Below are positions 1,450-63,500 of a stretch of 64,000 bases of DNA, one piece after another. Under the pieces are notes generated by a model. The model saw only the letters and a program-made list of their open reading frames with translations, did not search any database and had not been told where the DNA came from. The stretch is taken from the NCBI RefSeq assembly GCF_006345805.1, contig NC_043012.1, forward strand, positions 2,852,001 to 2,916,000, given 5' to 3'. The translations under genes and the position numbers were made by a program. The number at the start of each line of letters is the position of its first letter. Within the stretch, counting starts at the first letter, position 1. Source of the stretch: Octopus sinensis. Taxonomy: Eukaryota.

Positions 1450-1454
<5 letters not shown>

Positions 1455-1661
1455 TAATCCAAACAAGAAAACAAAAAAACAAAAAAGACAACAACGCAAG
1501 GAGGTGGAACAATTAAAGTATTATTAGGCGCTCAGGAAAAAGGGAAGAAGGAGGGTATGACGTTTCGAGCGGAGCTCTTCGTCGGAAACATAGGAGAAAG
1601 AAAGATCCCGAGGTGGGAAGACAGAGGGAAAAAAATGCAAGTGGTCTCACGAGGTCAACAT
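1450..1661 (-). mobile_element. Penelope-like pseudo-LTR / short non-autonomous repeat with hammerhead motif
   Basis: ~200-bp unit also present at 32447-32645 and partially at 1786-1969 and 22795-22920. Flanked by (TA)n. Minus strand carries CYGACGAA-GAGC-TCC-GCTC-GAAACGT. Confidence 0.6.
1555..1589 (-). ncRNA. Minimal type I hammerhead ribozyme motif (U4C core variant)
   Basis: Minus strand reads GUUU CCGACGA A GAGC UCC GCUC GAAAC GUC AUAC: stem II of 4 bp, GAAA core, GUC triplet, stem I with one mismatch. Confidence 0.55.
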
Positions 1662-1785
1662 ACTATATATATATAGTGGCGTACTCCGGATGAATGGTAA
1701 CAGTAATCCGTAGGTGTAAAAATCCAGGAATTGGTTATCCAAGGCAGTCAGAAGGCCGGGGTCCGTGTGAGCGTGCGGTATATAA

Positions 1786-1964
1786 AGTTAATCCAAACAT
1801 GAAAACACAAAGAGAAAACACAACAAAGCGAGGACGTGGAACAAATATAGTATTATTGGACGCTCAGGAACCTTCTTTCCTTTTTTCCTGAGTGTCCAAT
1901 AATACTATACTTGTTCCACGTCCTCGCGTTGTTGTGTTTTCTCTTTGTGTTTTCATGTTTGGAT

Positions 1965-1969
<5 letters not shown>
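1786..1969. repeat. Inverted repeat of the Penelope-like unit (85-bp arms, 14-nt loop)
   Basis: 1786-1870 is near-perfectly reverse-complementary to 1885-1969; the right arm runs into (TA)n. Confidence 0.9.
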
Positions 1970-4819: not shown

Positions 4820-4860
<41 letters not shown>

Positions 4861-15094: not shown

Positions 15095-15463
15095 TACTCT
15101 TTACTCTTTTACTAGTTTCAATCATTTGACTGTGGCCATGCTGGAGCACCGCCTTTAGTCGAGCAAATCGACCCCAGGACTTATTCTTTGTAAGCCCAGT
15201 ACTTATTCTATCGGTCTCTTTTGCCGAACCGCTAAGTTACGGGGACGTAAACACACCAGCATCGGTTGTCAAGCGATGTTGGGGGGACAAACACACACAC
15301 ACATACATATACATGTATACGACAAGCTTCTTTCAGTTTCCGTTTACCAAATCCACTCACAAGGCTTTGGTCGGCCCGAGGCTATAGTAGAAGACGCCCC
15401 AGGTGCCACGCAGTGGGACTGAACCCGGAACTATGTGGTTGGGAAGCAAGCTACTTACCACAC
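15095..15463 (-). mobile_element. SINE family K
   Basis: Near-full copy with internal (CA)n and a (TACTCTT)-type tail repeat. Confidence 0.85.
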
Positions 15464-15759: not shown

Positions 15760-18200
15760 TGTACTTTGTGTGATCCAGCGTGGAGCACAAAGTGTATCCT
15801 GGCCTGGGGCTATAGAAATGCTTTCAATGAGGACTTTACACAATCCTTAAATCGTAGTCTTGGTTTCTGCTGGGGGCGCTTTCCACAAACGAGTTCGCCA
15901 TATAGCATCTACTTAGGGATTGTCCAATCATTCATCCAAACGAGTGGTCAGTCCAACGTAAACGTTGCTTACACACTCTCTCTTCAGTGTTCAACACATC
16001 GGTTCGCTTTAAGACCTCTGTATGGAGTCTGCAAAGACCAGCCAGCATTAAAATTGTGGTTCAGACATCTCAGATGGAAGCGTTAAAGGACTCCGACATA
16101 ATGCCTGTAAAGGGTCCATGTCTCACATGAGTAAGGAGTAACATCAGCACACACGCCCAGTACACGGCAACTTTTGTTCGTTTCGTGATACCATGTTGGG
16201 GCCAGATACGTCTCCAAAGCCCTGAAGGAATCGGTTGCCTTCGGAAGCCTTAAAGATATTTCATTATCTAAAGAGTAAGAACGGCTGAATGTACTGTCCA
16301 GGTAGGCAAACTTGTCTACCACTTTCAGTGTCTAGGCTAAAGCTGAGTCCAAATAACTTGCAAGATGCAGAAATATGATCTTTGCATATCATCAGCTGCA
16401 TGAGAAACTAAGTCGCAATCACCTGCATAAAAGAGGTGAAGGAATAAGAGATTGAAAATTTTTCGGTACTTAATAAATAACCTAAAAAAGCCATCTGCAG
16501 CAAAAAAAAACAAAAAACATGATATACAAGGAAAATAGAGTTGGGCAAGGATAGCACTTTGCTTGACAACATTCTCTACAAGAATGGGTCCGGCCATGTT
16601 ACTACCGATATTGATTCGTGCCTCCTTTTTACCATGAAGTGATTTAATTATCGACACAAGGTGTCCTGGACAACCAAGTTTGGCGAATATTTTCCATAGG
16701 GAAACCTTTTTCAGTATCGAAGGCTTTTTCCTAAATCAATGAAAACCTGAGCATGACCCATATTTCGTTCGTAGCACTTCTCTTGTAACTGTCTGGTGGT
16801 GAAAATCATATCTATTTTTCTACCAGAACCGAAGCCACTTTGAGACTCTGGTAGGACGTCATTTGCAAGGCATTTATTCAAACGAGTAAGAAGAATACTT
16901 GCCAGAATCTTGCTAACAGTAGAGTAATGCCTCTATGGTTGCTACACTCTCTTTCCTTTACAGAAGGGAAGGATAACTGCATCGTTCTAGTTGTTGGCAA
17001 CAGTCCCGTCCCTCCAGACTACATTAATAAACTCGTGTGGATTCTGTGTAATACGACTACCGCCAAAGCGTAAGTTATCGGCGCTAATTCTGTCATTACT
17101 TGACACTTTACCAAGATTCAACTTACTTATTGCCGTCACTGCCGCACCTATTGAGGGTACAGATCCAAAGAGATGATGACAGGTCTCGGTTGAGCAGTGT
17201 CAATCACTGTATCATCTACAACTGACTCACGGTTTAGAAGTTCTGAAAAATATTCAGTTCAGCGATTTGTGATTTCTGTTGATTTAATAAGTAGAGTAGA
17301 GCTTCCCTTGGGAAGCAAAGGATTTAGAACTCTTAGGCTCATAAACTTGCTTCGCGAGATAGTGCTGCTTACTGTAATTGGCATCAGTGGAGATTTTGTA
17401 TTCTTTTAAATGAGTTAGTGCTAGATTTTGCTACACAACTGATAGCCTTCTGTGCCGTAATACACTGTTAGTATTGTACTTTGCAGACAGGAGTCGCTGA
17501 ACATCAGCACCATTTTCAACCAAGCCCTTGGTTGTAGCATATCCCAGTGTTTCAGCAGCGCATTGAAAACCCTGGGCTCAAAATTCTTAATTTGTGATAT
17601 CTTCGATACTGGAAAAACAATTCTGAAGTTTCTTCCTCACAGTAGGATCATATATTTTACGGACATTATGGGGCCAAAGAATCCCGACAGCCCCTTTTCT
17701 CTCTTTCACTTTAATTATTATCCGGAACTTTACTCACACCAAGCAGTGATCTGTCCAACACTGCAATCCATGAAAGGACTTGACATTAAAGATATCTTAG
17801 ATATCACACTTGCGAATGATAACATAATCCAGCAAGTGCCAAGCCTTAGACCTCGGATGCATCGGTGTTGTTGTGTAATAACAGTTGTGTATAAAGTGAG
17901 TACTTGCACTCCAAAGTACATATTCATCATAGAGCTTTAGGGGTCTGCATTGCTTATCATCTTCCCTAAACTAAAACGTCCAAGAGAATTCCATGTGTGT
18001 TAATCAGTTCCAACCCTAGCATTAAAATCCCCCAGTAGAATGACTGGCTCCGAGAATTTTCCTGAGTACGGCTCTCAGCTGGTCTTAGAAGGTAGTTATT
18101 TTCGTCAAGGCTGATTAGAGTAGAAGCATAGGCACTTATCAGACGTAAAAGCTTCAAACGGTCAGACAAATGAAGCCAATCTCGAAATTATAAGTTTGCT
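15760..18200 (-). pseudogene. Decayed RTE-clade (BovB-like) LINE: APE endonuclease plus reverse transcriptase
   Basis: Minus-strand motifs across frameshifts: LISAYASTL, MHPRSKAWHLLDYVII...WTDHCL, EYFSELLNRES, SNHRGITL, LPESQSGF...DMIFTTRQLQEKC, VKQSAILA, VDKFAYLDS, YSCETWTLY, MLYGEL...RFKDCVK. Confidence 0.85.
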
Positions 18201-19455: not shown

Positions 19456-20714
19456 GGGTTCGACAAAATAATGGAAACACCTTAAAATTTCAAACAAATT
19501 AATTTTAATATGGGGTAAGACCGCCTTTGGTAGTAATTACACCTTGAATTCTCCTAGGTGTGGACTTGTACAAAGCTTGAATTGTTTCCAAAGGAATTTT
19601 TGTCCATTCTTCAGCTAAAACAGTCTCCAGTTCTTGTAGTGATGATTGTGGAGGATATCGACTCCTTTACTTGTTTTTCTAAAATGCACCATAAATATTC
19701 AATAATATTGAGATCTGGGGCTGTGGTGGCCAGATAAGACGTTCAACTTCACTAGAATGTTCTTCGTGCCATTCAGTAACAACTTTAGCTATGTGAATTG
19801 GTGCATTATCATCCTGAAAGGTTGCATTTCCCTCCGGAAACAGTTCCGGAAGTATAGGATGAATATAATCAGATAAAATGCTTAAATAGTCTTGACTATT
19901 AATTCTGCCATGAAGGGAAACCATTGGGTCGGGAATTTCCAAGATATAGCCCTCCCCCCAGATCATCACAGATTCTCCTCCATATTGAACAGTTGGAAGA
20001 AGGTAGTCTGGGTCAAATGCTTCTTTTGGTTGTCTCCACACATATACTCTGCCGGTGGTCGGAAATAAGTAAAGGATGATTCATCCGGCACAATAACATT
20101 CTTCCACTGCTCTAGGGACCAATTCTGTAGGTTTTTACTCCACTCTAAACGCTTTGCAACGTTTGTTTTTGAAAGTAGTGGTTTTCTGATTGCAGCCCTC
20201 CCGTGAAATCTGGCTTTGTGCAGCTCACGGCGAACAGTTTTTGTGGAAACTGGGTTCTCGAGGTAGTCATTAAGCTCTGCAGTAATTTTGGCAGCTGTAC
20301 TTTTGTGGTCCTTTCTAACAATTCGCGTAAGAGTCCGACAGACTCTATCTGAAAGTTTTGGTTTTCTTCCGGAGTTTTGTTTCGACGAGGTGGCTTTCCC
20401 TCTTTCTCAAAGGCTGTCATTACTTTCGAGACAGTACTTCTTGATACACCAAACATTTCGGCTGTTTTCGTTACGCTAGCGCCTGCCATGCGAGCACCAA
20501 CAATATGACCTCTTTGAAAGTCCGATAGATCTGTCATTTTAAAAAATTTAGTTATTTTTCTGATGATATCTGAAAAGAAACAGCAATTTTAGCAAAACAT
20601 ATTAAGCAACACTAATAATAAATGAAAAACGTAAAACTAAAGAAGCTTTTGACGGTTTTATAGATATTTCAAAATTATGGTGCTAGATATTTCTATTATT
20701 TTGTCCGATTCCTG
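19453..20714 (-). mobile_element. Tc1-family (DD34E-type) transposon with disrupted transposase
   Basis: Imperfect TIRs CAGG(GGTT/AATC)..GACAAAATAAT, TA flanks inside microsatellites. ORF pieces MTDLSDFQRGHIVGARMAGASVTKTAEMFGVSRSTVSKV (20537), GGESVMIWG, FQDDNAPIH and a frameshifted PDLNIIEYLW. Confidence 0.92.
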
Positions 20715-22395: not shown

Positions 22396-22791
22396 CTTGT
22401 TTCAGTCATTTTGACTGCGGCCATGCTGGAGCACCGCCTTTAATCGAACAACTCGACCCCGGGACTTATTCTTTGTAAGCCCAGTACTTATTCTATCGGT
22501 CTCTTTTGCCGAACCGCTAAGTGACGGGGACATAAACACACCAGCATCGGTTGTCAAGCAATGCTAGGGGGACAAACACAGACACACAAACACACACGCA
22601 CACACACACATATATATATACATATATACGACGGGCTTCTTTCAGTTTCCGTCTACCAAATCCACTCACAAGGCTTTGGTTGGCCCGAGGCTATAGCAGA
22701 AGACACTTGCCCATGGTGCCACGCAGTGGGACTGAACCCGAAACCATGTGGTTGGTAAACAAGCTACTTACCACACAACCACTCCTGCGCC
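22396..22791 (-). mobile_element. SINE family K, full length
   Basis: Head GGCGCAGGAGTGG through tail TGACTGAAACAAG; internal (CA)/(TA) tract. Confidence 0.9.
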
Positions 22792-22794
22792 TAT

Positions 22795-22920
22795 ATATAT
22801 ATAGTAAATCCAGAAACGAAGAACAAATTCAAAAAGATCACAATGCGATACTTGGTACATACAAAGTGTTAAGCAGACGCTCAGGGAAGGAAAGAAAGCT
22901 GGTTTAACGTTTCGAGCAGA
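22795..22920 (-). mobile_element. Diverged, truncated Penelope-like unit with half a hammerhead motif
   Basis: GACGCTCAGG...GGTTTAACGTTTCGAGC matches the 1450 and 32447 units; starts at a (TA)n tract. Confidence 0.5.
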
Positions 22921-23118
22921 CGTCTGCACCAATGGAAGTGTTTTCTACTATAGCCTTGGGCCGACCAAAGCCTTGTGAGTGGATTTGGTAGACGGAAACT
23001 GAAAGCAACCCTACCACCACCACCAAAAAAAAAAAGTTGTTCTTACTGTAAAGGCTTCGCATACAGGATATAGGGTGGTTCTTCTGAGAAATTTTGTATT
23101 TTGGAAGCACTGTCTTCT

Positions 23119-32172: not shown

Positions 32173-32365
32173 AAGAGGCAAGCCATTAACAGGTTGCCTA
32201 ACATACTAGAAAGAACAGTCAAAAAGTCCAAACCACAGTTAAGAGCAATTTCGAAGGGTAAATGTATTTATTTTTCATTCCCTTTGGAATTGCTCTTAAC
32301 TGTGGTTTGGACTTTTTAACTGTTCTTTCTAGTATGTTAGGCAACTTGTTAATGGCTTGCTTCTT
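32173..32365. repeat. Inverted repeat with 86-bp arms and a 21-nt loop
   Basis: 32173-32258 versus 32280-32365, few mismatches; near (TA)n. Confidence 0.9.
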
Positions 32366-32384: not shown

Positions 32385-32446
<62 letters not shown>

Positions 32447-32451
<5 letters not shown>

Positions 32452-32645
32452 TAATCCAAACATGAAAACACAAAGAGAAAACACAACAACGCGAGGACGT
32501 GGAACAAATATAGTATTATTGGACGCTCAGGAAGGAAGGAGGGTTTAACGTTTCGAGCGGAGCTCTTCGTCAGAAACACAGGAAAAGGAAAGATCCAGAG
32601 AAGGGAGACGGAGGAAAAAAATCGCCAACGGTACACACGCGATCA
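32447..32645 (-). mobile_element. Penelope-like pseudo-LTR unit, best-preserved copy
   Basis: Collinear with 1450-1661; (TA)n on both sides. Confidence 0.6.
32543..32577 (-). ncRNA. Minimal type I hammerhead ribozyme motif
   Basis: GUUU CUGACGA A GAGC UCC GCUC GAAAC GUU AAAC: intact CUGANGA and GAAA core, 4-bp stems I and II, palindromic AACGUU stem III. Confidence 0.7.
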
Positions 32646-32658
32646 TATATATATAACT

Positions 32659-33051
32659 AGCAGTATCGCCCGGCGTTGCTCGGGTTTGTAAGGGAAATAA
32701 CTATATAAGCATTTTTAGAGATGTAAAGTATAATAGCCATCTCAATATGGCTAACCACAAAGGGGGGTGTTACTGTAGCTTTTTACGTTCTGAGATTTAA
32801 TAATACATTTTTAGAGAGTTACTTCCCTTATATAGTAGCAAAAAAATGCATTAAAAAATGGGCAAAAATGATGGTAATTTTTTTTTAAATCGTAGACTCA
32901 TCGTAGACGCGCACTAATAACCAGAAGGGCTCGATATGAATCACGACTATAAGATACCCGCTTTTGGTTACACTGCACCGCAAAATGTGGGAGTAGTTAG
33001 GAATCTAAATCGTAGGAGACAGACACACAACTTTAGTTTTATATATAAAGA
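32659..33051 (-). mobile_element. Non-autonomous Helitron
   Basis: 5' TC(TTTATATATAAA), 3' hairpin CCCGAGCAACGCCGGG followed by CTAG, inserted between A and T. Confidence 0.75.
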
Positions 33052-33405
33052 TATTGCATATGACTTCTTAAAACAGTGTGTCCTTTCGATTTCAAGGCAG
33101 AAGAATGTATGATTTGGAACAAAGAGTGGTAGATTGGTGGAATCAGTAGAACGGCGTCTACAATAACTACGTCAATTCGTTACAGTTCTTTAAGTTTTGA
33201 GTTCAAATTCCGCCGAGGTGAGGTTTGCTTTTTAGCTTCCTGGACGCGATAAGATAATCCACTGGTGAATAGTGAGACGTTTTAATGCCTATTCTTACAG
33301 TGCATCCTAAATGTGAAACAGATTCTAAAAGACAGCAAGACAAGAGATTTGGTTACTATTTCTCGTAGGTCGAGTGAAGGGAGTAAAAGATCTCACGTCC
33401 ATCAC

Positions 33406-33790
33406 TCTGTATATAAAGCTGAAGTTGTCTGTATGGCAGCTTTGGTAGCCTTCAACTAACACTATCTCCTCCGAGACCCTGCGGCGCAAGTTGACCAAAA
33501 TTGAGAGTATGATAGAAGAAGCTTGCTCTTCATTCCGTAGAGGAAAAAATTCAAATCGGGCCATGTTAACACCAAAAATTATTTACATCAAAAAGGTGCT
33601 GTTTTTCTATGAAAATCCCTATTTTTTACGAATTTTTGACTGCTGTGTCGCCATTTCTCGGTGTATTTAAACCAGAAAAATGTTCCCTTAAAGAGAATAA
33701 CAAGCTACATAATACACAATTTTTACTTTTCAAAAATTCCAATTCTAAAGGGTCGAAACAAACCCGAGCAACGCCGGGCGATACTGCTAG
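33406..33790 (+). mobile_element. Non-autonomous Helitron, second subfamily
   Basis: 5' TCTGTATATAAAGCTGAAGTTGT; 3' 34 bp identical to the neighbouring element, ending CTAG|T. Confidence 0.7.
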
Positions 33791-34192
33791 TATAATATAT
33801 ATGCGGTGGTATGACTAGGATTTTGAATGGCTACCAAACATTTGGCTGACCAATGGTAAATCTGTTGACCTCTAAACTGAAGTACCGAGATACTAGTTGG
33901 TCAATCTAAAACAAAAGAACCTATTTTCTTATATGCTCAAGTTATGAATAAGCTACTTGTATGTTTGTAGATAAGTTCGTGTGTTTTGGATGTGTATGTG
34001 TCTAGATCTACATATGTATGTATTATGTCTCTTTCTCATATGTGTGTGTTTGTTGTTCATACTTGACCTATACAACCTTTCCTAAATCTCGACCGGAAAA
34101 CGAAAGGAACGGCGCGTAGTGCAGTGTTATGATAACAGACTGCGTGCGCGCGCGTGAGTCCGCTCTCACCTCTCCTACTTACACACACACAC

Positions 34193-35867: not shown

Positions 35868-36256
35868 GGCGCAGGAGTGGCTGTGTGGTAAGTAGCTTGT
35901 TTACCAACCACATGGTTCCGGGTTCAGTCCCACTGCGTGGCACCTTGGGTAAAAGTGTCTGCTATTATAGCCTCGGGCCGACCAAAGCCTTGTGAGTGGA
36001 TTTGGTAGACGGAAACTGAAAGAAGCCTGTCGTATACATGTATATGTATGTGTGTGTGTGTGTGTGTGTGTGTTTGTCCCCCGCAACATCGCTTGACAAC
36101 TGATGCTGGTGTGTTTACGTCCCCGTCACTTAGCGGTTCGGCAAAATAGACCGATAGAATAAGTACTAGGCTTACAAAGAATAAGTCCTGGGGTCGATTT
36201 GCTCGACTAAAAGGCGGTGCTCCAGCATGGCCGCAGTCAAATGACTGAAACAAGTA
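35868..36256 (+). mobile_element. SINE family K (OK-like), full length
   Basis: A-box TGGCTGTGTGG, B-box GGTTCAGTCCC, CORE-like ACCTTGGG..AAGTGTC, internal (TG)n, 3' CAGTC-AAAT-GACTG hairpin. Confidence 0.9.
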
Positions 36257-46983: not shown

Positions 46984-47357
46984 TACTCTCTTTTACTCTT
47001 TACTTGTTTCAGTCATTTGACTGCGGCCATGCTGGAGCACCGCCTTTTAGTCGAGCGAATCGACCCCAGGACTTATTCTTTGTAAGCCCAGTACTTATTC
47101 TATCGGTCTCTTTTTGCCGAACCGCTAAGTGACGGGGACGTAAACACACCAGCATCGGTTGTCAAGCGATGTTGGGGGGGGACAAACACAGACACACACT
47201 ACAGGCTTCTTTCAGTTTCCGTCTACCAAATCCACTCACAAGGCATTGGTTGGCCCGGGGCTATAGCAGAAGACACTTGCCCAAGATACCACGCAGTGGG
47301 ACTGAACCCGGAACCATGTGGTTGGTTAGCAAGCTACTTACCACACAGCCACTCCTG
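46984..47357 (-). mobile_element. SINE family K
   Basis: Near-full copy with a short internal microsatellite. Confidence 0.9.
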
Positions 47358-59700: not shown

Positions 59701-60086
59701 TCTACCACCAATACTTTTCAATTACAGCCTTCAGTACCCCTCTCCCCCTCCACAATTCAATCTATATACCTATATATTTTATATATAAATATATACGCAC
59801 ACATACACACATCCAATGATATATTTACCAATCAGTAAATGCATCAATGAAAAGAACATGGTTTTTTTTATTCGCGTATCTAATTTACTTCTTGTGTTGG
59901 ATTCTTTAAAAATGGTGAATTTCTGGATATAATTCATCGGATTCTTTATTCAAATTCTACATGTCTGATGTATGACAGATTATTGAGGAGTTTTTTTATT
60001 TCGCCTATCGGTGCTAATGTGACTTGGTTGTATTTCGCTGCTGCCAAGCTTCTTTGTGTGTGAGTGTAAAAAGCCTACCAACCAAC

Positions 60087-60578
60087 ATGGGCCAGCAGTC
60101 GTCATCACCATCTCATAGCGCCAACGACTCTCAGAAATTTGAAAGGTCTTCCAGTTACCGGAAGAAGAAAGACAGTTGTGATATCGGAATTGTGAATGCC
60201 GCTGCTGCCTCGCCATTATCGGCTCCGAGTTTGTCGCAGAGTACCGGCTTCAAATCAAGTAAACCCCCCGACCTACCTTCCACACATCGGCAGCTGCTTC
60301 ATCACACCGAACACGACCAACAACAGACTGAACAACCTCCACTGCCTCCAACACCAGTAGCCAAACCGACCACGGATAGTACCCTTACTGGCATGGTTAC
60401 TGCTGTTAGTCCGCCCCAGCCGCCGCCTCCCGTGGGGCCGTCGGCACCCCCGATGGAGAGAAGGTCCTCCTCTCCAGCCCATCACAATCACACTTCGTTA
60501 GCGGGTGCCCGGGCTGGAACCGCTGGACCTAGCGGTGCCACTAACGTCAACACGGCCGCTACTGCCAATATGTGTCAG
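60087..60578 (+). CDS. First coding exon (164 codons) of an unidentified, probably N-myristoylated Ser/Pro-rich protein
   Basis: CAAC-ATG-G context; MGQQSS fits the myristoylation pattern; GC-rich non-repetitive ORF in AT-rich DNA; PPLPPTP and PPQPPPP motifs; phase-0 donor CAG|GTGAGA followed by AT-rich intron-like DNA. Confidence 0.75.
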
Positions 60579-63500
60579 GTGAGAGACCTAGATTATTATT
60601 ATCATTGTTTTTATTATTGCCATTGTTAATGTCATTTTATCATTACCTATTTATTGATACCAATAAACCTCTAGCTTGCGATTTGATGTGTCCAAGGATA
60701 CGTTGCATATTTTATAGTCATAATTTCGTCACATCTCGCTACCTGTGCATTAAATGTATACATACACATATACACACAGTATATATCCATCAATTTATAT
60801 TATACACAACGCAAATCCTAACAACCGTTCATCCACACATATGTTTACCATTTTATGGAATTTTCAGGATTTATCTTTCAGTTCTGCAGCTATTGGAGCA
60901 GGGTCAGTTACCTTGACCATGTGGCTTCAACAACATACCACCCTATATTTAGATTGTATTGATTACGTTAGCAAATAAAGGGCAGCATTCAGATCCCCAC
61001 GACCAAGTCCTTCCAGCTGACGATTGGTATTCATTAAGCAGTTGTATTAGATTATCAAGAAGGTTACTTAATCAAAAAGACAACATCGACAAATTCGAAT
61101 AAAATATTTTAGAACATTTAATAAACCTCTATTGATAATGTTGACATTTGTCTTTCGTTGACAGGAACTGTTTGCTTCATCTGTTACACGATGGTATATA
61201 CTCTTTGTGTATGCATGAATGCCTTTTTATACTGTTATTCATTCACCTACTAAAAATTAGTCACATGTCAAGATGTAGACGGTAGGAAACCGTTGGTATC
61301 GAATTGATATTTTAGTTTCCTATATACGAACCAGACATGTCATGGTAATCTTCATTCAGTTATATCTCTCACCTGCGTTATAAGAGTTGATGGCTCTAAC
61401 GACTGTCACATCATATTCAATTATCATGATAAAGGGTCTTTTACCTACGTGACTAAATGTATGCAGCTGTTCACCCTTAATAACCACCTAATTATTTGTC
61501 TAAGTCTTCCCCCACATACACACACATCTAAGAACCAATATAGATGTTCTGGTTGTTAGACATATTGGTGGAAATTTGTTCACAATTTTCAGAGTCAGGT
61601 GTTCGTTGTTAGGTAAGCTTTTGGTTGCATTCCTTCTTGTCTGATGTATTCTAGGAATGACATCAAGGAGTAAGAGGTTTTCATACCATACACAAGTATT
61701 GTTATAGCAAACGTTACATACACTCAATTAAATTAGTTGCCATAATGTCTTCAAGTTCTAATACCAATAAATGGCTGGAACCCTAACAATAAGGTTATCA
61801 ACGCGAAAGAACTTGAGTAATCTCGAGAATTTGTTGTAGAACTATTAAACAATACGCAGGGCAACTAGTTTTGTTGACACATGTACTATAATAGTACGTC
61901 AAAGTACCTTTATCGGAAGTTTTGGTATAATTTGGTCTTAGAATTTTGTCTTATGGTTCTCCAATGTATGAATGAATGAATGGTGTTAGCAGTAAATCTA
62001 TATAATAATGATCAGTTTTTCTTCAAATTTGTACCTCACTCATAATTACTCATCAATCAGCTACATATCTTAACATGTTGATAAAGATACATAAAACTGT
62101 TTGATCCTTTAACGTGATCCTAACTTTGTGCTTGAGTCATTTTTCACAACAAAGGTGGAAAACTAATTATTCTGTTCTAGCTAACTGGCAAGAACATAAA
62201 ATATAACATATTCTTGCAAGCGAGTGTATTATATATTTTATATATCAAATTTTGAAGGTTCTCATATCCAATTGGTTAGGCAGTTGATTAACCAAAGTTT
62301 TTTTCAGTTTAACATCAGAGATACTCTTCTGTGATCGAAGTCTCTTACCTGAGGACTCTTGAAGCATTTATACATAATAGGCGAATAGATACGCGCCATT
62401 TGCTATTGTTGTTTTTGTCCCATGTCAACCTGATCGTACAGGCTTAATATTAAAAGCATTTCAGCTGTGACAGTATCTTATTGTTAGGTTAAGACTACTT
62501 AACGTCGTGTCAAACATGTCTTTCATTTTTTAAAGACGTTAGGGTATGATTTGAGAGAGTTTTGATTGCTGTTTCTTACAAGAAGAAGGACTACTTAAAT
62601 ATTTCGTCTTATAGCTCGTGTATATATATTCCTATATTTTAACTGTAAAATTGATTCCTTGATCCATTGCTGAGACTTCTTTTGATCTGTGCTTTGTTTA
62701 TTGGCAAGGTTATTTTACTCCACAGAACATCTTCACATGTTCGTCCTTCATAAAGTCAGCTGGCCATCGTACACAATATATCAATATTCAGTCTAAATCA
62801 CTAACAATATTGTTCTGCCTCTGCTCGATACATTCAAGTTTCTGGATTGTTATTAAATTATTCATTGGTTTGTAACAGTTAAGATTAAATTAAACTCAAC
62901 AATCAACATATTCTCTTTTCTCTTGATACAAAATACTTGGATTTTACAAAACTAAGGCTTCATCTTATTGTTGTTTAGCCCGAATCAGTTCTGATCAAAC
63001 GTTCCTGCTTTGACTATCATACCATGTTATTACCAGACTGTATCCTTGACTACATTATCCAATATGTCGTTACTAAGGAGTGTTTTGTAGAGGATGTTGG
63101 CGATTATTTCTTATCTTACAAAATCCTCCATTTCACTCAGTTATCGGATACAAAAGTTATTGTCTTCCATGCTGACCTTCCCTAGTCAAGAAGTTTTGGC
63201 TTCACTCCCCCTCTTTACCCACTCTCGATGCTTCTTCTTGCTACCAACAATACCAGTGTGGATGGGTGGTTGGTACCTTGTCACCACCTCCAAAAAGATG
63301 TCTGCGGTCGAATTTGATCACTAAACTATATAGCATCTCCTGTAACATTTCGCATGAGGGACCAACAAAGAATATGGAAACGAAATCGCCCTCAAATTAT
63401 ATCCCCCCAACTTAAAAAAATCACGGACACATTGGATAGATAACATTGTCTTGGTTATACTGTCTAAAAAACTGGATGGTCACGACTGGAATGCTTTCGA

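What the first reader, a model, noticed from the sequence alone, without database searches (positions are those of the whole stretch)
32543..32577. Intact minimal hammerhead ribozyme motif in a short, ORF-less repeat anchored on (TA)n
Seen: the minus strand reads GUUU-CUGACGA-A-GAGC-UCC-GCUC-GAAAC-GUU-AAAC, with every conserved hammerhead core nucleotide, paired stems I and II, and stem III reduced to the palindrome AACGUU. Established: Penelope-like elements carry minimal type I hammerheads with palindromic stem III that are proposed to cleave as dimers; an extra A after A9 is known from a viroid hammerhead. Inference: this is a ribozyme-bearing non-autonomous Penelope derivative (retrozyme-like) with at least 3 related copies in 64 kb.
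Basis: partly seen in the sequence, partly recalled or inferred. Interest (0 to 1): 0.8.

Follow-up and report, generated by a model that had tools for sequence, protein, structure and literature searches.

The report
Penelope-type minimal hammerhead in short retroposon
The motif is a real minimal hammerhead ribozyme of the kind already known from Penelope-like retrotransposons, sitting in one copy of a roughly 200-base repeat that lands in (TA)n microsatellites of a cephalopod genome; it is an ordinary, probably inert transposon relic rather than a new kind of RNA.

Summary
It has every conserved hammerhead core nucleotide, a 4-bp helix I, a 4-bp helix II, and no helix III beyond the palindrome ACGU. 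A generic minimal-hammerhead descriptor hits it once in the window, against 0.01 hits per shuffled window.

It also shows the features published for Penelope-like element (PLE) "min-HHRs": an extra base between A9 and G10.1, a G10.1-C11.1 pair, a palindromic 15.2-16.2 and a short helix I.

The carrier is a ~200-nt ORF-less unit with five copies in the window: two full and three 5'-truncated. All end in GGATTAACTT or GGATTTAC followed by (TA)n. One pair lies head-to-head, which is a PLE hallmark. Only copy A keeps an intact core.

The host is a cephalopod, a group in which PLEs are known to be abundant.

Rfam finds no hammerhead here, but it also misses two other min-HHRs used as controls. Folding energies disfavour the active fold, in line with the published low, dimer- or protein-dependent activity of this class.

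No RT/GIY-YIG ORF link could be tested, and there are no tandem arrays, so this is not a retrozyme in the strict sense. Verdict: a new member of a known kind, of low interest.

The parts
32543..32577 (-). Minimal type I hammerhead (min-HHR). Helix I 5' strand 32574-32577; CUGACGA 32567-32573; extra A 32566; helix II 32562-32565 / 32555-32558 with loop 32559-32561; GAAA 32551-32554; CG 32549-32550; U16.1 32548; U17 32547; helix I 3' strand 32543-32546. Predicted cleavage between 32547 and 32546.
   Evidence: Sequence read; only descriptor hit in the window; own covariance model gives 53 bits, by construction.
32448..32646 (-). Copy A, a full ~199-nt unit of the repeat with no ORF. The hammerhead lies at unit positions 70-104 and the 3' end is GGATTAACTT.
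   Evidence: BLAST within the window and alignment. Homology to copy B stops at the TA runs on both sides.
32388..32447 (.). (TA)30 microsatellite abutting the 3' end of copy A.
32647..32656 (.). Short TA run at the 5' end of copy A. It is the remainder of the target microsatellite, split by a later DNA-transposon insertion.
1451..1662 (-). Copy B, a full unit about 82% identical to A, followed by (TA)n at 1401-1450. Its hammerhead at 1555-1589 is degenerate: U4->C, GUC, and helix I 3' strand AUAC.
1785..1870 (-). Copy C, 5'-truncated. It holds the 3' 86 nt, is 99% identical to A, carries no hammerhead and ends in (TA)3.
1871..1968 (+). Copy D, 5'-truncated and inverted, head-to-head with C. 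It is 96% identical to A, starts about 4 nt after the predicted cleavage site, and is followed by (TA)n at 1969-2022.
22804..22924 (-). Copy E, a divergent relative (~72% identical) truncated inside the hammerhead. It keeps GCTCGAAACGTTAAAC exactly, lacks the CUGANGA box, and ends GGATTTAC + (TA)5. The 5' boundary is approximate.

Best explanation
Copy A is one insertion of a short (~200 nt), non-coding retroposon derived from a Penelope-like element (PLE). It carries the PLE-type minimal hammerhead as an inherited module.

Shown:
- The complete hammerhead core with helices I and II.
- All published min-HHR hallmarks except a long helix II.
- Five copies that keep the same 3' end next to (TA)n and lose sequence from the 5' end. 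This fixes the hammerhead strand as the RNA strand and points to target-primed reverse transcription.
- A head-to-head pair of truncated copies.
- Two diverged full copies with identical boundaries.

Inferred:
- The unit is mobilised in trans by the RT/GIY-YIG protein of a (TA)n-targeting PLE clade (Hydra- or Neptune-like). That protein would nick the microsatellite and start reverse transcription near the GGATTAACTT end.
- In transcripts of source copies, the ribozyme pairs with a second copy through the ACGU palindrome and intermolecular helix I (a double hammerhead), or is helped by the PLE protein, and cleaves after GUU.
- The solitary copy at 32.5 kb has no partner ribozyme. It is most likely an inert relic whose core simply has not yet mutated.
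For: Motif:
- The motif is exact. It is the only descriptor hit, against 0.01 expected per shuffle.
- A metagenome scan with the 5' strand of helix II and the inserted base left free returned two eukaryotic loci. Both have the extra A and a complementary GAGC(C) strand. One helix I pair covaries, U:A to G:C.

Family anatomy:
- Searches give the copies, their ends and their flanks.
- The 3' half of the hammerhead is the best conserved block between A and the divergent copy E: 15/16 against 59/101 elsewhere, p = 0.004. For A against B it is 31/35 against 130/173, p = 0.06.

Literature:
- Hydra-clade PLEs almost always insert into (TA)n and all carry hammerheads. PLE insertions are heavily 5'-truncated and often have an adjacent inverted truncated copy (PMC8557442).
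- Non-autonomous PLE derivatives and monomeric copies are documented (PMC8557442; bioRxiv 10.64898/2026.07.22.740005).

Host:
- The host is a cephalopod.
- Octopus vulgaris is reported to have 31 recently active PLE families (PMC13282606).
Against: - No RT or GIY-YIG ORF is next to any copy. No parent PLE could be retrieved, so the PLE link rests on structural hallmarks and the ribozyme class.
- Rfam 15 reports no hammerhead at gathering or at E<=10, even on a 71-nt stretch. It also misses the two control min-HHRs.
- Helix II is 4 bp, not the 6-8 bp typical of published PLE min-HHRs.
- Nearest-neighbour energies disfavour the active fold. The monomer hammerhead fold is -3.8 kcal/mol against -7.7 for a competing hairpin that pairs UGACG with CGUUA. 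The double hammerhead is -5.7 against -22.5 for a plain duplex dimer. Helix II has probability 0.18 in the 199-nt unit.
- Only two full copies define the 5' boundary.
- The long 3' and short 5' TA runs could also mean that (TA)n is a templated tail rather than the target.
Confidence: 0.62

Rival explanations
1. The copies are ordinary terminal fragments of an autonomous PLE: 5'-truncated insertions or pLTR pieces. They are not a dedicated ~200-nt non-autonomous element. The ribozyme is the same PLE min-HHR, and only the status of the carrier differs.
For: - PLE insertions are mostly 5'-truncated, and most genomic min-HHRs are single motifs from truncated PLEs (PMC4209133; PMC8557442).
- Three of the five copies here are visibly truncated.
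- In the Anolis PLE the hammerhead sits at the pLTR-ORF junction, close to the RT initiation region (PMC11167929). A short 3' fragment would therefore carry it.
Against: A and B are 82% identical independent insertions that begin at the same position, directly after a TA run. They share no similarity further upstream. Random truncation would not be expected to give the same end twice.
Confidence: 0.25
2. This is a hammerhead look-alike. The 35-mer is an imperfect hairpin inside a non-PLE retroposon (a SINE or LINE tail) that happens to spell the core boxes, and there is no ribozyme ancestry.
For: - The most stable local fold is a simple extended hairpin, -7.7 against -3.8 kcal/mol.
- Rfam hammerhead models do not match.
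- The descriptor's chance rate of 0.01 per 64 kb would give hundreds of chance hits in a genome of Gb size.
- No PLE ORF link was found.
Against: - Four features not required by the core are all present.
- The strand of the motif agrees with the strand deduced independently from 5' truncation.
- The ribozyme half is the best conserved block between divergent copies.
- (TA)n targeting and an inverted truncated pair are PLE traits.
- The same subclass recurs in another eukaryote with an unforced complementary helix II.
Confidence: 0.08
3. This is an active metazoan non-LTR retrozyme. Tandem units would be transcribed, self-cleaved at each hammerhead, ligated into ~200-nt circular RNAs and reverse transcribed by a PLE enzyme.
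For: - The unit size of ~200 nt falls in the 170-400 nt range of animal retrozymes (PMC7229834).
- Retrozymes are now argued to be PLE derivatives with monomeric offspring copies.
Against: - There is no tandem array in 64 kb. The only adjacent same-strand pair, C then B, has one hammerhead, and that one is mutated.
- The ribozyme is of the minimal class, not the canonical type I with loop 1-loop 2 contacts that defines animal retrozymes.
- The own covariance model finds no further copies.
Confidence: 0.05

Closest known systems
Minimal hammerhead ribozymes (min-HHRs) of metazoan Penelope-like elements (Cervera & de la Pena 2014, PMC4209133; Lunse, Weinberg & Breaker 2017, seen only as a citation in PMC6765202)
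   Same: Type I topology, a full catalytic core, helix I of 4 bp, an unpaired base between A9 and G10.1, a G10.1-C11.1 pair, no real helix III, and palindromic 15.2-16.2 that implies dimeric action. It occurs as a dispersed single motif in a truncated or short repeat.
   Different: Helix II is 4 bp with a 3-nt loop, rather than the 6-8 bp reported for Schistosoma and Drosophila PLE motifs. The host is a cephalopod, which the papers read here do not describe explicitly. No link to a pLTR-ORF was shown.
Hydra-clade (and Neptune/Naiad) EN+ Penelope-like elements that insert into (TA)n (Craig et al. 2021, PMC8557442)
   Same: (TA)n on both flanks, strong 5' truncation, a head-to-head inverted truncated copy, hammerhead present (Hydra and Neptune yes, Naiad no), and an aquatic invertebrate host that includes Mollusca.
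   Different: The unit here is ~200 nt with no RT/GIY-YIG ORF. The clade cannot be assigned without the protein.
Animal non-LTR retrozymes (Cervera & de la Pena 2020, PMC7229834; Li et al. 2026 bioRxiv)
   Same: Short, non-coding, hammerhead-bearing, AT-rich unit of a few hundred nt, thought to depend on PLE enzymes. Monomeric copies exist.
   Different: Retrozymes are defined by tandem repeats and canonical type I hammerheads that excise circular RNAs. Here there are only solitary or truncated copies and a minimal ribozyme.
Poseidon PLE of Anolis carolinensis, PAc (Frangieh et al. 2024, PMC11167929)
   Same: The hammerhead lies close upstream of the region where reverse transcription starts, and the target is AT-rich. 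That ribozyme is weak alone and is assisted by protein, which fits the poor folding energies found here.
   Different: In PAc the ribozyme overlaps the start of the ORF. Here there is no ORF.

Membership tests
Hammerhead ribozyme, type I | Conserved core: C3 U4 G5 A6 N7 G8 A9, G12 A13 A14, A15.1-U16.1, H17 | tested here: met
   All are present in copy A. Copy B has U4->C.
Hammerhead ribozyme, type I | Helices I and II base-paired around the core | tested here: met
   GUUU/AAAC and GAGC/GCUC, 4 bp each. Helix I cannot be extended beyond 4 bp.
Hammerhead ribozyme, type I | Helix III closing the three-way junction | tested here: inconclusive
   A15.1-C-G-U16.1 has no loop, so a monomer cannot form it. 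A 4-bp intermolecular ACGU/ACGU helix is possible, but the double-hammerhead fold scores only -5.7 kcal/mol against -22.5 for the duplex dimer.
Hammerhead ribozyme, type I | Match to the Rfam hammerhead covariance models | tested here: not met
   No hammerhead hit at gathering or at E<=10 on 64 kb, 701 nt or 71 nt. As a control, two other min-HHRs are also missed, so the models do not cover this minimal class.
Hammerhead ribozyme, type I | Site-specific self-cleavage | not testable with these tools
   Needs in vitro transcription. The predicted cut lies between 32547 and 32546.
PLE min-HHR (Cervera & de la Pena 2014) | [quoted passage not shown] | tested here: met
   Extra A at 32566. The feature is listed in PMC4209133.
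PLE min-HHR (Cervera & de la Pena 2014) | Conserved G10.1-C11.1 pair | tested here: met
   G at 32565 pairs with C at 32555.
PLE min-HHR (Cervera & de la Pena 2014) | Palindromic 15.2-16.2 with no or minimal helix III | tested here: met
   C15.2 G16.2 within ACGU.
PLE min-HHR (Cervera & de la Pena 2014) | Short helix I (4-5 bp) and long helix II (6-8 bp) | tested here: inconclusive
   Helix I of 4 bp is met. Helix II is only 4 bp here, and 4-5 bp in the two metagenome relatives.
PLE min-HHR (Cervera & de la Pena 2014) | Location in a PLE terminal repeat or a truncated PLE | tested here: inconclusive
   The carrier has PLE hallmarks, but no ORF-bearing parent could be retrieved.
Penelope-like element (EN+) | ORF with telomerase-like RT and GIY-YIG endonuclease | tested here: not met
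   No ORF lies in or next to any of the five copies. The window was not exhaustively scanned for RT/GIY-YIG, and the family's parent element could not be searched.
Penelope-like element (EN+) | Frequent 5' truncation with a constant 3' end | tested here: met
   Copies C, D and E start at unit positions of about 114, 105 and 82. All five copies keep the 3' end.
Penelope-like element (EN+) | An inverted 5'-truncated copy directly adjacent (head-to-head) | tested here: met
   C (1870..1785, -) abuts D (1871..1968, +). The trait is described in PMC8557442.
Penelope-like element (EN+) | Microsatellite target, (TA)n for the Hydra, Naiad and Neptune clades | tested here: met
   TA runs lie on both sides of A and B and at the 3' end of all copies. 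A templated (TA)n tail is not excluded.
Animal non-LTR retrozyme | Head-to-tail tandem units, each with a hammerhead | tested here: not met
   There are no tandem units in the window, and only two hammerhead-bearing copies, 31 kb apart.
Animal non-LTR retrozyme | Canonical type I hammerhead with a 6-bp helix I and loop 1-loop 2 contacts | tested here: not met
   Helix I is 4 bp and open, with no loop 1. The definition is in PMC7229834.
Animal non-LTR retrozyme | Expression as circular RNA | not testable with these tools
   No transcriptome data are available.

The most novel reading that the evidence does not exclude
The ~200-nt unit is a discrete, SINE-like parasite of a (TA)n-targeting cephalopod PLE. 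It would be reduced to the two RNA modules the PLE protein needs: the min-HHR, and about 95 nt downstream the reverse-transcription start region. That would make it a natural minimal template that delimits the cis requirements of PLE retrotransposition.
Probability: 0.35. Interest if true: 0.4.

Novelty: new member of a known kind. Interest (0 to 1): 0.25.

Why it matters
The finding adds a cephalopod example to the already large catalogue of PLE-associated minimal hammerheads. It shows that a motif-level reading of raw sequence can pick them out even though Rfam models miss the class.

If the 200-nt unit proves to be a discrete non-autonomous element, it would give a compact natural substrate. 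That substrate could be used to ask what a PLE reverse transcriptase recognises, and whether the ribozyme is needed at all. The question is open, because hammerhead mutants did not affect insertion of the Anolis PLE in vitro (PMC11167929).

Otherwise this is routine repeat annotation.

Tried and rejected
1. Rfam 15 on the whole window (gathering), on 701 nt and on 71 nt (E<=10) gave no hammerhead. A control on two other min-HHRs shows the models are blind to this class, so the negative was not used against min-HHR membership.

2. I tried to fish for more genomic copies through spurious ORFs. The antisense 64-aa translation of copy A was searched against 5.8 billion proteins, and no candidate was found.

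3. The supplementary consensus sequences of Craig et al. 2021 are not held, and Lunse et al. 2017 is not held.

4. The two metagenome contigs with related min-HHRs carry no obvious RT ORF.

5. An own covariance model built from four min-HHRs and run with filters off found no further copies in the window.

6. The core-only pattern CUGANGA-N7-18-GAAA gave four other sites, none with a helix II. The U3-A8 variant core gave nothing foldable.

7. I tested whether the element extends upstream of the 5' TA run. A and B show no similarity there.

8. Other repeat families that end at TA runs exist in the window. They were not examined further and have no hammerhead.

9. Pfam on ten long stop-free segments found only a Tc1-type transposase remnant. 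The whole window was not scanned for RT/GIY-YIG.

10. The miRNA-family hits at 32211-32327 were rejected as artefacts of a MITE-like palindrome.

Full report
**Observation.** In hammerhead numbering it parses as follows:
- helix I 5' strand GUUU
- C3 U4 G5 A6 C7 G8 A9
- one extra A
- helix II GAGC-UCC-GCUC, with the G10.1-C11.1 pair
- G12 A13 A14 A15.1
- C15.2 G16.2 U16.1 U17
- helix I 3' strand AAAC.

Every invariant core nucleotide is present. The predicted scissile bond lies between 32547 and 32546. One correction: the palindrome that can serve as helix III is ACGU (15.1 to 16.1). It is not AACGUU, because A14 and U17 must remain unpaired in an active hammerhead.

**Chance.** I wrote a generic descriptor: a 4-bp helix I, CUGANGA, an optional 1-nt insert, helix II of at least 4 bp with a 3-8 nt loop, GAAA, 0-10 nt, UH, and the second strand of helix I. 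It hits this site and nothing else on either strand. In 300 dinucleotide-preserving shuffles the mean is 0.01 hits, and 3 shuffles have one hit. That is rare for one window, but it would still give hundreds of chance hits in a genome of Gb size. The motif alone is therefore not proof, and the context has to carry the argument.

**Rfam.** No hammerhead family matches at gathering thresholds, nor at E<=10 on 701 nt or on 71 nt. As a control I ran the same search on two other minimal hammerheads recovered from a metagenome (described under independent examples). They are missed as well. Rfam's models expect a helix III hairpin. The negative result says "not a canonical type I hammerhead", and it says nothing about the minimal class.

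**The carrier.** BLAST of the region against the window, direct reading and an alignment show a ~200-nt repeat with five copies. Sense here means the hammerhead strand.
- A (32646..32448, -) is full length with an intact ribozyme.
- B (1662..1451, -) is full length and 82% identical. Its ribozyme carries U4->C, GUC, and a mismatch in helix I.
- C (1870..1785, -) holds only the last 86 nt and is 99% identical to A.
- D (1871..1968, +) holds the last ~98 nt, is 96% identical, and lies head-to-head with C.
- E (about 22924..22804, -) is a 72%-identical relative truncated inside the ribozyme. It retains GCTCGAAACGTTAAAC exactly and lacks the CUGANGA box.

All copies end in GGATTAACTT (GGATTTAC in E) followed directly by a TA run: (TA)30 after A, (TA)25 or more after B and D, and shorter runs after C and E.

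A and B also begin directly after a short TA run, and they share no similarity further upstream. The 5' TA run of A is interrupted by a 1.1-kb element with 34-bp terminal inverted repeats and TA flanks at 32657..33792. Copy A was therefore originally embedded in one TA microsatellite.

No copy contains or adjoins an ORF. Truncated copies always keep the same end. The strand carrying the hammerhead is therefore the strand that was reverse transcribed from its 3' end. This is an independent check that agrees with the motif's orientation.

**PLE hallmarks.** Cervera & de la Pena 2014 (PMC4209133) describe the min-HHRs of metazoan Penelope-like elements. They have a helix I of 4-5 bp, no helix III, and work as presumed dimers. 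The authors list features that emerged without being required by their search:
- a conserved G10.1-C11.1 pair
- palindromic 15.2-16.2.

Copy A has all of these. It differs only in having a 4-bp rather than a 6-8-bp helix II.

Craig et al. 2021 (PMC8557442) report that Hydra-clade PLEs occur in aquatic invertebrates including molluscs, almost always insert into (TA)n, and always carry hammerheads. They also report that PLE insertions are heavily 5'-truncated and often have an inverted truncated copy directly adjacent. The C/D pair, the truncation series and the TA flanks reproduce this picture.

**Independent examples of the same ribozyme subclass.** I scanned the metagenome collection with CTGANGA-N11-GCTCGAAACGTNANAC. 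This pattern leaves the inserted base, the 5' strand of helix II and the loop free. It returned two contigs of an unidentified eukaryote. Both have the extra A and a 5' strand GAGC(C) complementary to GCUC. One helix I pair changes from U:A to G:C relative to the window. Neither contig shows an RT ORF.

**Conservation.** Between A and the divergent copy E, the shared ribozyme half matches at 15 of 16 aligned columns, against 59 of 101 in the rest (one-sided Fisher p = 0.004). Between A and B the figures are 31/35 against 130/173 (p = 0.06). With so few copies this is suggestive only. It does fit selection on the ribozyme in the lineages of source elements, followed by decay in dead copies such as B.

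**Folding.** Nearest-neighbour energies do not favour the active fold.
- The 35-mer prefers an extended hairpin in which UGACG pairs with CGUUA: -7.7 kcal/mol against -3.8 for the helix I plus helix II fold.
- A double hammerhead of two copies scores -5.7, against -22.5 for a plain duplex dimer.
- Within the 199-nt unit, helix II has a pairing probability of 0.18 and helix I about 0.06.

These models ignore the tertiary core. The result is nonetheless in line with the literature. PLE min-HHRs cleave poorly in vitro even as dimers. The Anolis PLE ribozyme cleaves only with its protein present, and it is dispensable for insertion in vitro (PMC11167929).

**Host.** An exon-like ORF at 60024..60629 matches an Acanthosepion pharaonis protein at 72% identity over 98% of its length, so the window is cephalopod. 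A tRNA-SINE-like repeat occurs at least four times. From memory it resembles the abundant octopus SINE, which I did not verify. PLEs are abundant and recently active in Octopus vulgaris (PMC13282606). Hammerhead_1 hits have been reported in the giant squid genome (PMC6962438).

**Interpretation.** The best reading is a solitary copy of a short PLE-derived retroposon that carries a PLE-type min-HHR. The steps that are shown are the motif, its class hallmarks, the family anatomy and the strand. The steps that are inferred are mobilisation in trans by a (TA)n-targeting PLE protein, dimeric or protein-assisted cleavage after GUU in source transcripts, and inertness of this particular copy, which has no partner ribozyme nearby.

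The main rival differs only in degree. It holds that the copies are terminal fragments of an autonomous PLE rather than a dedicated 200-nt element. The shared 5' boundary of A and B argues against it, but two copies cannot settle the point.

A chance look-alike in a non-PLE repeat is unlikely given the convergent evidence. A true retrozyme is not supported, because there are no tandem units and the ribozyme is not of the canonical class.

[quoted passage not shown] This is a new member of a known kind, in a host group where I found no explicit description in the papers read. Interest is low, with a modest upside if the unit proves to be a natural minimal template for a PLE reverse transcriptase.

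**What could not be done.** No collection available here holds the host genome. A genome-wide copy census, the search for the parent PLE and a proper covariation test therefore remain the decisive open steps. Attempts to reach more copies through spurious ORFs and through supplementary files failed.

Noticed in passing
window 32657-33792: A ~1.1-kb non-coding element with 34-bp terminal inverted repeats (ACTAGCAGTATCGCCCGGCGTTGCTCGGGTTTGT and its reverse complement), flanked by TA. It is inserted into the TA run at the 5' end of copy A. It looks like a non-autonomous Tc1/mariner-type DNA transposon.
   Followed up: partly
window 32173-32365: A MITE-like palindrome with 86-nt arms, 94% complementary, and a 21-nt spacer, next to the (TA)30 run. 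It produces a set of sub-threshold miRNA-family matches on both strands (for example mir-2513, 53.7 bits against a gathering score of 89). These are hairpin artefacts.
   Followed up: partly
window 19682-20588 (-): A frame-shifted remnant of a Tc1/mariner transposase (Pfam HTH_Tnp_Tc3_2, E = 1.9e-17; HTH_23).
   Followed up: partly
window 16086-16932 (-): Three adjacent stop-free segments with LINE-type reverse transcriptase-like sequence (for example ...PESQSGFGSGRKIDMIFTTRQLQEK...). None reached Pfam thresholds, so they are probably a decayed non-LTR element.
   Followed up: partly
window 22742-22772, 35887-35917, 47312-47342, 15429-15459 and many partial copies: An abundant tRNA-SINE-like repeat (GGCGCAGGAGTGG...GGTAAGTAGCTTG.TTACCAACCACATGGTT...). 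ARAGORN calls no tRNA. From memory it resembles the major octopus SINE. Copy E of the hammerhead family is inserted next to or into copies of it.
   Followed up: partly
window 60024-60629 (+): An exon-like ORF starting MGQQSS..., 72% identical over 98% of its length to an unnamed Acanthosepion pharaonis protein (P0001). It is probably the first coding exon of a conserved cephalopod gene and identifies the host group.
   Followed up: partly
window, whole: Extreme microsatellite load: 29 runs of (TA)8 or longer in 64 kb, long (TG)n/(CA)n tracts, and a ~500-nt trinucleotide tract at 48.8-49.4 kb that reads as poly-His, poly-Met, poly-Ile or poly-Ser depending on the frame. Other repeat families also end at TA runs (for example flanks at 4858, 48104, 19162, 37933).
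   Followed up: no
L001 689-726 (+) and L002 2866-2829 (-): Two min-HHRs of the same subclass (CUGANGA-A-GAGC(C)...GCUC-GAAAC-GUC-ACAC) in metagenome contigs MDSQ01076973.1 and MDSQ01042480.1, from an unidentified eukaryote. In L001 the motif sits between ~30-nt inverted repeats.
   Followed up: partly
window 32615-32645 (-) and 1629-1660 (-): The 5' part of the unit has a small hairpin (ATCGC...GCGAT in A) followed by a conserved T7 run in both full copies. Its function is unknown. A T7 run would terminate RNA polymerase III in the sense direction.
   Followed up: no
window 1677-1778: A unique 102-nt sequence sits between the (TA)3 that ends copy C and the TA run that precedes copy B. It has no other copy in the window and its origin is unexplained.
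   Followed up: partly
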